A stretch of DNA of 64,000 bases, taken from Cyanophora paradoxa CCMP329 (Eukaryota > Plantae > Glaucophyta). A model generated the notes under the pieces. That model saw nothing but the letters and a program-made list of their open reading frames with translations. It was not told the DNA's origin and made no database searches. The stretch spans positions 1 to 64,000 of the forward strand of contig QPMI01000033.1 in NCBI GenBank assembly GCA_004431415.1, written 5' to 3'. The first letter of the stretch is position 1; the number at the start of each line of letters is the position of its first letter. The translations under genes and the position numbers were made by a program. Shown in pieces: positions 6,911-8,713 of this stretch.

Positions 6911-8713
6911 ATGGATATCCGCGTTCCGAGGCGTGGCGGCGCTGCGCATGCGGGCGAGCGGCTGATTCGCCTTGTAGAAGGTGCAGCGCCCGCCTCACGG
7001 CGCGCGCTTCCGCTCGTGCACGCTCGCGTACGCTCTTATACGCTCGCGTACCTCCGACCTGCAGGCGACCTGGCGCGGGGGGATCCCGCGGGAAGCAGGT
7101 TCGACGTCCTCCTCGTCAGCGCCTTCCCGGGCGACTACGCCCCTGTCCCTGGGACGCTGGTGAGCCGTCAATACGAGCGCCGGCAGGCGGCTGGGCCAGC
7201 GGGTCTCGTGCGCGTCGCGCTCTGGCTTCCGACGCGCGCCGGGCGGGGGCGGCAGATCGGGGCGCTGCTGGAGGCCGGGGTGGACGTGGCGGAGCTCGCG
7301 GAGAGCCGGGAGTCGGACCTGCTCGCGAGCCACGGGTGCTGGATGAGCCGCCGCCTGCCGCCGGGCCACGCCTTCTCCCGCATCCTCTGCTTCGAGCCGC
7401 GCCCCGGCGTGCCCCCCGAGGAGTGCGCCATGCACCTCGGCGCCGCGCCGCCGAGCTGGAGGGCGAGCCGGGGGCGCCGCCGCAGGCTGGTGGCCTCGGT
7501 GTTCCGCGCGCTGGCGCCGTACCTGCTGCTGGAGGGCCCCGAGGCCGTGCGGCACGTCGCGACGCCCCTCCTGCGCGCCGGCAACCAGGGCCTCCCCCAG
7601 GAGGCCGTCCTCGAGACCCTCGTCCGCGTCGCCGCCAAAGTGCCCCGCCCACGCCCGCCCCGCCCCCGTCCCCTCCCCGCCCGACCCGTGCGGGCCCTCC
7701 CCTCAGTGGGACGGGGCGGGGCTGCCGCTGGAGACGCTCACGATCTGCTGCCACCGGGGCGTCCCGGCGCCCCTCGCCGCCCTCTTCGCCCGCCTCAAGG
7801 CCGAGCTCGAGGGCGCCCCCTCCCCCGCCCACCTCCCGCCCCCGCCCCCAGCGCCGGCCGCCGCTCCCGCTCCCGCTGCTCCCGCCGCCCCCGCCCCCGC
7901 CCCTGGCCTGCAGGCCTCCTCCTCCTTCATCACCGGCCTCTCCTCCGTGGCCCAGCAGCCATTCAAGGCGCCCCGTCCCCCGCGCCCCGCCGCCCGCCGG
8001 CCTCCTCTTAGGCCGCCGGGCGCAGTGGGACGTCTTCATCAGCTACAGCCACAGGAACGGCGACATCGCGAGCCTCGTCCTGCGCGTGCGCCCCCGCTCC
8101 GCCGGGGCCGCCGCCGGGCGCGCCGCGACGGGGCGCGCAGCTGCTGCAGGAGAAGCGCCCGCGCCTGCGCGTCTTCTTCGACAACGCCGCCCTCCACAAC
8201 GGCTGCTACTGGCAGCAGGAGCTCTACGTGCGCCGCCCAGCTCCCCCGCCCGCGCCGGCGCGCCGCCTCCTCACGTAGCGTGCACGCGTGTGGGGGCAGG
8301 CGGCGATCGACGACACGCGCTCGGTGCTGGCGATCCTCACGCCGGACTACCTCGCGAGCAAGGCGCGGGGCCCCACTGCCCCGCCTCCTTCCGAAGCGCA
8401 ACGAGCTCGCGGCAGGTGTGCCTGGAAGAATTGCACATGTCAATATGCCGGCAGCGGGAGGAGGGCCGGACCCTCCTGCACCTCATTTACGCCGCCTCCA
8501 TCGAACGCCTGCCAACCTACATCAAGCTCCTCCAGTACAGGGACTGCCGCGAGGACGACCCCGCGAAGGCCCGCCCCGCCCCGCCCCGCCCCGGCCCGCC
8601 CTCAGCCTTCTCAGGCCCGGGTGCGTCAGGTGGAGGCGGCCGTGGACGACTTCCTCTCCTTCTTCTTCGGGGCGCGCACAGAGGGGCCTCACGGCCCGCC
8701 GCCCCTCGCATAA
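6911..8713 (+). CDS. Macrodomain-like / TIR domain fusion protein
   Basis: N-terminal part has macro-fold motifs (IRLVEGDL..DVLLVSAFPGDY; VATPLLRAGNQGLPQEAVLETL). C-terminal TIR motifs: WDVFISYSH, RVFFD, LHNGCYWQQEL, AIDDTRSVLAILTPDYLASKVCLEEL. Confidence 0.85.

What the first reader, a model, noticed from the sequence alone, without database searches (positions are those of the whole stretch)
6911..8713. Single-polypeptide Macro-like + TIR fusion: candidate NAD+/ADP-ribose immune module in an alga
Seen: after splicing, a macro-fold-like N-terminal domain (GDL..DVLLVSAF; ATPLLRAGNQGLP) is joined by a Pro-rich linker to a TIR with the catalytic Glu position intact (SKVCLEEL). Known: TIR domains hydrolyse NAD+ to ADPR-type signals, macrodomains bind ADPR, and type II Thoeris pairs a TIR enzyme with a macrodomain sensor on separate genes. 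Inference: signal writer and reader are fused here, giving a possible self-regulating or feed-forward antiviral switch. There is no NB-ARC, LRR or TM. The gene is fully intronised, so it is domesticated rather than contamination.
Basis: partly seen in the sequence, partly recalled or inferred. Interest (0 to 1): 0.8.

Follow-up and report, generated by a model that had tools for sequence, protein, structure and literature searches.

The report
Divergent macrodomain fused to TIR
A real, nine-intron gene of the glaucophyte alga Cyanophora paradoxa encodes a divergent macrodomain joined to a TIR domain, and this two-domain unit turns out to be a widespread but uncharacterised module of bacteria that also occurs in the animal Trichoplax.

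Summary
Window 6911-8713 (+) carries a 10-exon gene whose spliced product equals the public Cyanophora paradoxa model tig00000140_g8460.t1 (397 aa). Residues 247-384 are a TIR domain (Pfam TIR_2, E 2e-16) that keeps the glutamate catalytic in NADase TIRs (E324). Residues 13-198 match no Pfam, NCBIfam or PADLOC model, but fold with high confidence (pLDDT 90) into a macrodomain (Z 16.8 to PARP14 macro 2). A family profile also reaches Af1521 by sequence (E 4e-4).

The fusion is not an algal invention. The same macro-like then TIR unit occurs in over 1,100 protein clusters, in at least 125 bacterial species of 11 or more phyla, in one archaeon, and in Trichoplax. Of 211 family proteins, 185 have the TIR directly after the macro-like domain. 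All nine introns interrupt conserved coding sequence, so contamination is excluded.

The adenine-contacting Asp and a modified diphosphate loop are kept, but both MacroD hydrolase motifs are lost. That favours a ligand-binding, non-hydrolytic partner of an NAD+-cleaving TIR. The writer-reader switch idea remains untested inference. I found no paper on this fusion. The scan had noted other TIR genes in this genome, but not this family.

The parts
6911..8713 (+). Whole coding region (ATG to TAA) of Cyanophora paradoxa gene tig00000140_g8460.t1. It has 10 exons and encodes 397 aa.
   Evidence: P0001 threads exactly onto the window and is EukProt entry EP00741_Cyanophora_paradoxa_P008738.
6911..6980 (+). 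Exon 1 (residues 1-23 plus the first base of the G24 codon).
   Evidence: Donor aag|GTGCAG.
7065..7159 (+). Exon 2. It holds G24-D25-L26 (D25 codon at 7067-7069, the equivalent of the adenine-contacting Asp of Af1521) and the start of the loop-1 motif SAFPGDYAPVPGTL (from 7118).
7256..7422 (+). Exon 3, the middle of the macro-like domain. It holds IGAL, D76, W84, S86 and CFEP (residues 100-103).
7486..7639 (+). Exon 4. It holds loop 2, ATPLLRAGNQG (7559-7591), which aligns with the diphosphate-binding loop FPAVSAGIYG of Af1521.
7707..7967 (+). Exon 5. It holds the end of the macro-like domain (to 7814), the Pro/Ala-rich disordered linker (7815-7958, residues 199-246) and the first TIR residues.
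   Evidence: pLDDT is below 50 for residues 214-244, and the linker is absent from bacterial homologues.
6947..7814 (+). Macro-like domain, residues 13-198, spliced across exons 1-5.
   Evidence: The domain-alone AF2 model has pLDDT 90.2. Foldseek gives macroH2A1.1, PARP9/14/15 macro and YmdB at E about 1e-6. VIA-align gives Z 16.8, rmsd 2.8 A over 175 residues. The family profile reaches Af1521 at E 3.9e-4.
7959..8671 (+). TIR domain, residues 247-384, spliced across exons 5-10.
   Evidence: Pfam TIR_2 E 2.3e-16 and TIR E 1.8e-7. The family profile matches PDB TIRs from E 8e-12 down. The best single-sequence PDB match is Arabidopsis AT1G72930 TIR. Foldseek finds RPP1, Hydra TRR-2 and AbTir.
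8026..8085 (+). Exon 6 (WDVFISYSH..., TIR strand A).
8141..8227 (+). Exon 7 (holds the RVFFD and WQQELY motifs).
8300..8362 (+). Exon 8 (AAIDD...LTPDYLASK). Its donor is GC.
8416..8568 (+). Exon 9 (VCLEEL...). The E324 codon is at 8428-8430, at the position of the glutamate that is catalytic in NADase TIRs. Its donor is GC.
   Evidence: SKVCLEEL aligns with SSWCLDEL of AtTIR and SEWCKYEL of TLR2. This position is 98% Glu in the family.
8630..8713 (+). Exon 10, the C-terminal helix and tail, with the stop codon TAA at 8711-8713.

Best explanation
The locus is a functional, intron-bearing nuclear gene of Cyanophora paradoxa for a soluble two-domain protein. A divergent macrodomain (residues 13-198) is joined by a roughly 48-residue disordered Pro/Ala linker to a TIR domain (residues 247-384). 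These parts are shown: the gene structure, both folds, retention of the catalytic-position glutamate, retention of nearly all family-invariant pocket residues, and membership of a large family in which the macro-like domain is almost always followed directly by this TIR. The rest is inferred. The TIR probably cleaves NAD+, like other Glu-bearing TIRs of bacterial and plant immunity. The macro-like domain probably binds an adenine-diphosphate-ribose type ligand at the canonical cleft without hydrolysing it. The ligand could be NAD+, ADPR or a TIR product. Binding would couple ligand occupancy to TIR assembly or activity, much as the macro domain of ThsA responds in trans to ThsB products in type II Thoeris. 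In bacteria the didomain is appended to kinases, FHA, HSP70, NUDIX, GT4, CHAT-NB-ARC and contractile-sheath proteins. That pattern fits a portable effector or signalling module of conflict systems. The Cyanophora copy descends from that bacterial family, probably through a lineage shared with Trichoplax.
For: Gene and splicing: the product threads exactly onto the window, and no alignment gap falls at any of the 9 junctions when compared with 56 intron-less homologues. TIR. Macro fold. Conserved residues sit at strand ends and the following loops: G24-D25, S42-A-F-P-x-D-Y, L55-I-G, C100-F-E-P and A136-x-P-x-x-x-x-G143-x-Q145. P0001 keeps 63 of 81 positions that are at least 90% conserved in the homologues. 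Coupling: 185 of 211 family proteins have the TIR directly after the macro-like domain, and 22 of the remaining 26 have under 60 residues after the macro-like domain, too little for a TIR. Family size: 1,182 clusters at E<=1e-3 and 125 GTDB species. Fusion partners. In a Bacteroidota subclade the neighbours are a ThsB-like TIR, a patatin and a GT4. Thoeris II precedent for a macro domain sensing a TIR product: PMC11204291. Trichoplax kinship: E 4e-68, a pairing with SH-aLRT 85, and a shared signature SAFxxDYAxxPGTLIGAL that is absent from all the bacterial rows.
Against: There is no biochemical evidence. A Glu at this position also occurs in TLR TIRs not known to be NADases, so NADase activity is not proven. 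The macro-like domain gives no Pfam Macro or ThsA_Macro hit. It replaces the catalytic Asn and GGG loop, and replaces G[VIA][YF]G with G[DN]QG, so ADPR binding itself is uncertain. Most bacterial homologues have no conserved neighbour and sit in ordinary contexts, so an immune role is inferred from the domains and fusions only. No expression data for the Cyanophora gene were examined. The domain-domain contact test gave no verdict.
Confidence: 0.55

Rival explanations
1. Enzyme tandem. The macro-like domain is itself catalytic, with a non-MacroD active site built from the invariant D37, D47, Y48, E102 and Q145. It would process the TIR product or an ADP-ribosylated target, so the protein would run a two-step reaction rather than a sensor-plus-enzyme pair.
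For: The family-invariant acidic and polar residues at the cleft (D37, D47, Y48, D76, E102, Q145) are more numerous than simple binding would need. NUDIX domains, which also process ADPR, are fused to the module in several clusters.
Against: Both motifs needed for MacroD-type hydrolysis are absent. The nearest structures are non-hydrolytic binders: PARP14 and PARP9 macro 2, and macroH2A1.1.
Confidence: 0.2
2. The macro-like domain is not a nucleotide binder. It would be a scaffold or oligomerisation domain, or a sensor for a protein or another pathogen cue, and would simply bring TIR domains together. The TIR might then act as an enzyme or only as an adaptor.
For: Loop 1 is completely remodelled relative to ADPR-binding macros. 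ThsA macro domains are known to oligomerise (PMC11204291). TIR activity in general needs self-association.
Against: The adenine-contacting Asp and the Gly-rich loop 2 are conserved in register with Af1521. Conservation is concentrated at the canonical cleft rather than on a surface patch.
Confidence: 0.15
3. The Cyanophora gene is a decaying or silent relic of a bacterial transfer and no longer has a function. The gene model would then be an annotation artefact of an ORF-rich, GC-rich genome.
For: The branch is long, 2.0-2.3 changes per site. P0001 departs from 18 of 81 strongly conserved positions, among them R78L, R106G and A141R. Three of the nine donors are GC. No transcript evidence was examined.
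Against: The reading frame is intact across 10 exons, with every junction restoring homologue-colinear sequence. All invariant residues and the catalytic Glu are kept. Both domains fold with pLDDT above 90. Several of the departures are shared with Trichoplax, which points to lineage-specific change rather than decay.
Confidence: 0.07

Closest known systems
Type II Thoeris (ThsB TIR enzyme plus ThsA TM-macro effector)
   Same: It pairs a TIR that turns NAD+ into ADPR-type products with a macrodomain that binds those products, and ligand binding drives macro oligomerisation (PMC11204291).
   Different: In Thoeris the two domains are on separate proteins, and the macro sits on a membrane effector. 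Here they are one soluble polypeptide with no TM segment. The macro-like domain does not match ThsA_Macro (PF20016) or any PADLOC ThsA model. PADLOC and NCBIfam hits are weak and fall on the TIR only.
SARM1 (ARM-SAM-TIR NADase)
   Same: It is a single polypeptide in which a non-catalytic domain that binds NAD+-related metabolites controls a Glu-dependent TIR NADase. This is the best-understood precedent for cis regulation (my own knowledge).
   Different: The regulatory domain in SARM1 is ARM repeats, not a macro fold, and oligomerisation is through SAM domains. The TIR of this family matches SARM1 only weakly (E 5e-5, over the N-terminal half only).
Macro2-type and macroH2A-type macrodomains (PARP14 macro 2, PARP9 macro 2, macroH2A1.1) and Af1521
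   Same: They have the same fold (Z 15-16.8, rmsd 2.5-2.9 A over about 170 residues). The Asp before strand 2 and the loop-2 P-x-V-x-x-G-x-x-G align with Af1521.
   Different: Sequence identity is 12-15%. The Asn-x6-GGG loop is replaced by F-P-x-D-Y-x-P...(S/T)LIG, and G-I-Y-G is replaced by G-(D/N)-Q-G. There is no Pfam Macro hit.
Trichoplax adhaerens TRIADDRAFT_57729 (B3S091; XP_002113494.1) and bacterial 'TIR domain-containing protein' homologues of about 340 aa
   Same: They belong to the same family for both domains. BLASTP gives 33% identity to Trichoplax (E 4e-58) and 40% to the metagenomic bacterial-type protein P0002 (E 1e-64).
   Different: Trichoplax has 2 macro-like and 3 TIR domains, and its first TIR has Gln at the catalytic position. 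The bacterial proteins lack the introns and the Pro/Ala linker.

Membership tests
TIR domain superfamily | Match to the Pfam TIR or TIR_2 profile above the gathering threshold | tested here: met
   TIR_2 scores 60.8 bits (cut-off 28) and TIR scores 31.6 bits (cut-off 21.3) on residues 249-371.
TIR domain superfamily | Flavodoxin-like fold similar to solved TIR domains | tested here: met
   In the full-length model the TIR part has pLDDT 94-97. Foldseek finds RPP1, Hydra TRR-2, AbTir, L7 and MyD88 at E about 1e-6.
Enzymatic (NADase) TIRs | Glutamate at the catalytic position in the S-x-x-C-x-x-E-L helix C motif | tested here: met
   E324 in SKVCLEEL aligns with the Glu of SSWCLDEL in AtTIR and of SEWCKYEL in TLR2. 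The position is Glu in 98% of the family.
Enzymatic (NADase) TIRs | Measured NAD+ cleavage or cyclase activity | not testable with these tools
   This needs an enzyme assay. A Glu at this position is necessary but not sufficient.
Macrodomain superfamily | Three-layer alpha/beta/alpha macro fold | tested here: met
   The model has pLDDT 90.2 and pTM 0.88. It aligns to PARP14 macro 2 at Z 16.8, rmsd 2.8 A, over 175 of 200 residues. 345 chains score Z>=8, and macrodomains or macro-derived chains dominate the 50 entries shown.
Macrodomain superfamily | Sequence-profile match to known macrodomains | tested here: inconclusive
   The family profile reaches Af1521 at E 3.9e-4 and PARP14 at 4.5e-3, but only over the C-terminal half. 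There is no Pfam PF01661 hit even at E<=10 on exons or E<=1 on the protein.
MacroD-type ADP-ribosyl hydrolases | Catalytic motifs N-x6-G-G-[VLI] and G-[VIA]-[YF]-G | tested here: not met
   My own reading of the family alignment places invariant F44 at the Asn position and (S/T)-L-I at the GG[VLI] position. HMMER aligns loop 2, G-(D/N)-Q-G, with G-I-Y-G of Af1521.
ADPR-binding macrodomains | Asp contacting adenine N6 after strand 2 | tested here: met
   G24-D25-L26 aligns with QGDIT of Af1521. D25 is 98% conserved.
ADPR-binding macrodomains | Measured binding of ADPR or a derivative | not testable with these tools
   This needs ITC, DSF or a co-crystal structure.
Type II Thoeris | Two-gene system with a ThsB TIR and a ThsA carrying TM helices and a ThsA_Macro domain | tested here: not met
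   Here there is a single polypeptide with no TM-like stretch and no PF20016 hit. PADLOC gives only weak ThsB-type hits, on the TIR. Most bacterial homologues have no conserved partner gene.

The most novel reading that the evidence does not exclude
The macro-like then TIR didomain is an ancient, self-contained 'single-chain Thoeris'. In this reading the TIR makes an ADPR-derived product, and the attached non-hydrolytic macrodomain binds it. Binding drives further assembly and activation, giving a feed-forward NAD+-collapse or signalling switch. This module would be conserved from bacteria to a glaucophyte, placozoans and molluscs, making it one of the few complete bacterial immune modules retained intact in eukaryotes.
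Probability: 0.2. Interest if true: 0.8.

Novelty: new variant of a known kind. Interest (0 to 1): 0.58.

Why it matters
TIR enzymes and macrodomains are the writer and reader of NAD+-derived immune signals, but they are known to work together only in trans, in type II Thoeris. Here a distinct, unannotated macrodomain clade is almost always wired in cis to its own TIR clade. It occurs in more than a thousand protein clusters, and in an alga and an animal. This gives a compact, experimentally tractable system for asking how ligand binding controls TIR activity: about 340 aa in cultured bacteria such as Nostoc, Thauera, Nitrosomonas and Nitrobacter. It also adds a case of a bacterial-type immune module kept intact in eukaryotes. 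The macro-like domain deserves a family model of its own, because current databases name these proteins only as TIR proteins.

Tried and rejected
1. Exon-by-exon Pfam search by reference found nothing. The exons are 20-128 aa, too short or too divergent. All later searches and folds used P0001, the public protein returned, which one search shows to be the exact spliced product.

2. The PADLOC and NCBIfam scans gave only weak hits, all on the TIR. The family is not a catalogued defence system.

3. The search for a conserved operon partner found none, either in five metagenomic contexts or across 80 GTDB loci. The one exception is a Bacteroidota subclade.

4. No bacterial donor could be assigned. 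Cyanophora sits on a long branch in an unresolved polytomy. A cyanobacterial (plastid-related) origin is neither supported nor excluded.

5. A complex-prediction run of the macro-like domain against the TIR domain returned no verdict, with a score of 0.00. It is not evidence either way.

6. Literature searches for Macro-TIR or TIR-Macro fusions, for Cyanophora TIR domains and for the Trichoplax locus tag found nothing relevant. The Aravind-lab surveys that I could read do not describe this dyad. Burroughs et al. 2015 could not be fetched under the PMC id I tried.

7. The ESM Atlas feature search gave only sub-threshold leads.

Full report
**The observation**

The region 6911-8713 (+) lies in very GC-rich DNA in which long ORFs occur in all frames. 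A homologue search used the read-through ORF 6911-8008, given by reference and restricted to the largest exon. It returned a 397-aa EukProt protein, P0001 (tig00000140_g8460.t1), and a 341-aa metagenomic protein, P0002.

A script that threads P0001 codon by codon onto the window, allowing GT/GC...AG introns, reproduces it exactly.
- There are 10 exons: 6911-6980, 7065-7159, 7256-7422, 7486-7639, 7707-7967, 8026-8085, 8141-8227, 8300-8362, 8416-8568 and 8630-8713.
- There are 9 introns of 53-96 nt, six GT-AG and three GC-AG.

The listing of cluster members identifies P0001 as EP00741_Cyanophora_paradoxa_P008738. Two earlier notes of this scan on the same genome agree on the organism.

The exon-by-exon Pfam scan by reference was blank. 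All further work used the database protein P0001, which equals the spliced product.

**Are the introns real?**

In an alignment with 56 intron-less homologues (34-42% identity to most), P0001 shows no gap at any of the nine exon junctions. Each intron therefore interrupts conserved coding sequence, and its removal restores that sequence.

The only large eukaryote-specific insert is a Pro/Ala-rich stretch of about 48 residues between the two domains, inside exon 5. AlphaFold2 predicts it as disordered, with pLDDT below 50 for residues 214-244.

**The TIR domain**

- Pfam gives TIR_2 at E 2.3e-16 (60.8 bits against a cut-off of 28) and TIR at E 1.8e-7 on residues 249-371.
- A profile of the family's TIR parts reaches TLR2, TLR15, MyD88, flax L6/L7, RUN1, Roq1, a bacterial TIR, Cat1 and AbTIR, at E from 8e-12 to 1e-6.
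- P0001 alone is closest to the Arabidopsis AT1G72930 TIR. There SKVCLEEL aligns with SSWCLDEL.
- E324 (codon 8428-8430) therefore occupies the position of the Glu that is catalytic in plant, SARM1-type and bacterial NADase TIRs. That this Glu is catalytic in those enzymes comes from my own knowledge of the families.
- This position is Glu in 98% of the family.
- The same position is also Glu in TLR2, which is not known to be an NADase. The residue is therefore necessary but not sufficient.

**The N-terminal domain**

Residues 1-200 give no hit in Pfam, NCBIfam or PADLOC. Three lines of evidence nevertheless identify a macrodomain.
- A profile of 58 family N-domains finds the archaeal macrodomain Af1521 (E 3.9e-4) and PARP14 macro domains (E 4.5e-3) among PDB sequences. 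Loop 2, A-x-P-x-V-A-A-G-D-Q-G, aligns with A-F-P-A-V-S-A-G-I-Y-G. The motif QGDLT aligns with QGDIT.
- AlphaFold2 on this alignment gives a confident model (pLDDT 90.2, pTM 0.88).
- Foldseek returns macroH2A1.1, PARP9/14/15 macro domains and YmdB at E about 1e-6. VIA-align gives Z 16.8, rmsd 2.8 A over 175 of 200 residues to PARP14 macro 2.

The invariant and near-invariant residues lie at the C-terminal ends of the strands and in the loops that follow. They are G24-D25-L26, D37, S42-A-F-P-x-D47-Y48, L55-I-G57, D76, W84, S86, C100-F-E-P103, F117-R118 and A136-x-P138...G143-x-Q145. By my reading this is where the canonical macro ligand cleft lies; no coordinates were available to check it.
- The adenine-contacting Asp is kept.
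- Both MacroD hydrolase motifs are gone. By my own alignment of the motifs, N-x6-GG[VLI] becomes F44...(S/T)LI. By the HMMER alignment, G[VIA][YF]G becomes G(D/N)QG.
- The nearest structures are non-hydrolytic binders.

I read this as a conserved ligand site with altered specificity. It is more likely a binder than a MacroD-like hydrolase. This is inference.

**The family**

- An exhaustive profile search finds 1,182 clusters (50% identity) at E<=1e-3, and 341 at E<=1e-30.
- A scan of one genome per GTDB species finds 125 species. On the tree of the best 80 loci they span at least 11 phyla, and include cultured Nostoc, Nitrosomonas, Nitrobacter, Thauera, Aquimarina, Agriterribacter and Flavihumibacter, plus one archaeon.
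- With local HMMs, 185 of the 211 family proteins in hand have the family's own TIR directly after the macro-like domain. Another 22 end within 60 residues of it, too short a tail to hold a TIR. Only 4 have a longer tail with no TIR.
- The didomain mostly stands alone at about 340 aa.
- It is also attached to Ser/Thr kinases, FHA, HSP70, NUDIX, GT4 glycosyltransferases, an extra ThsB-like TIR, RyR, CHAT plus NB-ARC, and fused VipA-VipB contractile sheath proteins.
- No neighbour is conserved across the family. The exception is a Bacteroidota subclade, where a ThsB-like TIR protein, a patatin-like phospholipase and a GT4 flank the gene.

These partners are typical of bacterial conflict systems. 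That is why I favour an immune or conflict role, but it is a contextual inference.

**Origin of the algal gene**

- On a maximum-likelihood tree of 90 rows, Cyanophora sits on a long branch (2.26 changes per site) in an unresolved polytomy inside the bacterial diversity. No donor can be named.
- The last homologue search found Trichoplax adhaerens TRIADDRAFT_57729, with E 4e-68. This protein has two macro-like and three TIR domains.
- With Trichoplax added, the two eukaryotes pair with SH-aLRT 85. The tool warns that two long branches meet here.
- Each placed alone goes to the same neighbourhood of the tree.
- Both share the signature SAFxxDYAxxPGTLIGAL, which is found in none of the bacterial rows examined.
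- They also share several further departures from the bacterial consensus, at positions T51, S54, R106, G107, P110 and S312.
- The best structural match in the ESM Atlas is a cluster of 699-aa mollusc TIR proteins, at TM 0.85 against about 0.72 for canonical macros. I could not fetch those sequences, so this is only a lead.

I therefore think a shared eukaryotic lineage of bacterial origin is somewhat more likely than a private transfer into Cyanophora. It is not settled.

**Mechanism**

The shown steps are a soluble protein (no TM-like stretch), two well-folded domains and a flexible tether.

The inferred steps are these.
- The TIR cleaves NAD+.
- The macro-like domain binds an adenine-diphosphate-ribose type ligand.
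- Occupancy of that site controls TIR assembly or activity.

Two precedents apply. [quoted passage not shown] In SARM1, regulation occurs in cis (own knowledge).

The rival readings are a catalytic macro-like domain, a non-nucleotide scaffold or sensor, and a silent relic. An attempt to test a direct macro-TIR contact in silico gave no verdict.

**Novelty and score**

- Literature searches found no description of this fusion.
- Current family libraries name these proteins only as TIR proteins.
- The parts are of known kinds, and the gene is already in the public gene set. I therefore class the finding as a new variant of a known kind.
- It is of moderate to good interest, because the family is large, unannotated, conserved into eukaryotes and directly testable.

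Noticed in passing
P0082, P0108, P0109, P0071; L041 (Thauera sinica, ORF of 959 aa ending at the matched gene): The macro-like then TIR module is fused to the C-terminus of a joined VipA-VipB (type VI secretion or contractile-sheath) protein in several independent clusters. In P0109 a Ser/Thr kinase and an FHA domain are also present. A sheath protein that carries an NAD-linked effector is unusual.
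   Followed up: partly
L047, L053, L058-L066, L072, L076, L077, L081 (Bacteroidota loci), within 4 kb of the gene: This is a conserved gene cluster around the macro-like-TIR gene. It holds a second TIR protein (TIR_2/ThsB_TIR plus a CarboxypepD_reg domain), a patatin-like phospholipase and a GT4 glycosyltransferase with a weak GT4-conflict match. It looks like a multi-gene, Thoeris-like conflict island.
   Followed up: partly
P0212 (Trichoplax adhaerens B3S091), residues 5-193, 229-421, 428-570, 587-729, 821-959: This animal protein has two macro-like and three TIR domains of the same family. The first TIR has Gln at the catalytic Glu position and the second keeps Glu. Trichoplax sp. H2 has a 1,082-aa counterpart (P0249).
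   Followed up: partly
ESM Atlas structural hits to model m976257910b31: The best match (TM 0.85) is a cluster of 699-aa mollusc TIR proteins. The second (TM 0.81) is a cluster of 349-aa Bacteroidota proteins with DUF4145 and no TIR. The macro-like clade may therefore have partners other than TIR.
   Followed up: no
window 7968, 8363, 8569 (intron donors): Three of the nine introns of this gene use GC-AG rather than GT-AG, all with the context aag|GC. That is a high share for a single gene and may reflect the extreme GC content of the genome.
   Followed up: no
L054 (Candidatus Methanocrinis natronophilus): An archaeal genome carries a family member that is sister to a Chromatiaceae ectosymbiont sequence within a mostly Pseudomonadota group (SH-aLRT 92-93). 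This suggests transfer between domains.
   Followed up: no
L001 8084-11940: Next to the closest metagenomic homologue (P0002) lie a caspase-like Peptidase_C14 gene and a 649-aa TIR-TPR gene. The setting looks like a defence island, but it is not seen at other loci.
   Followed up: no
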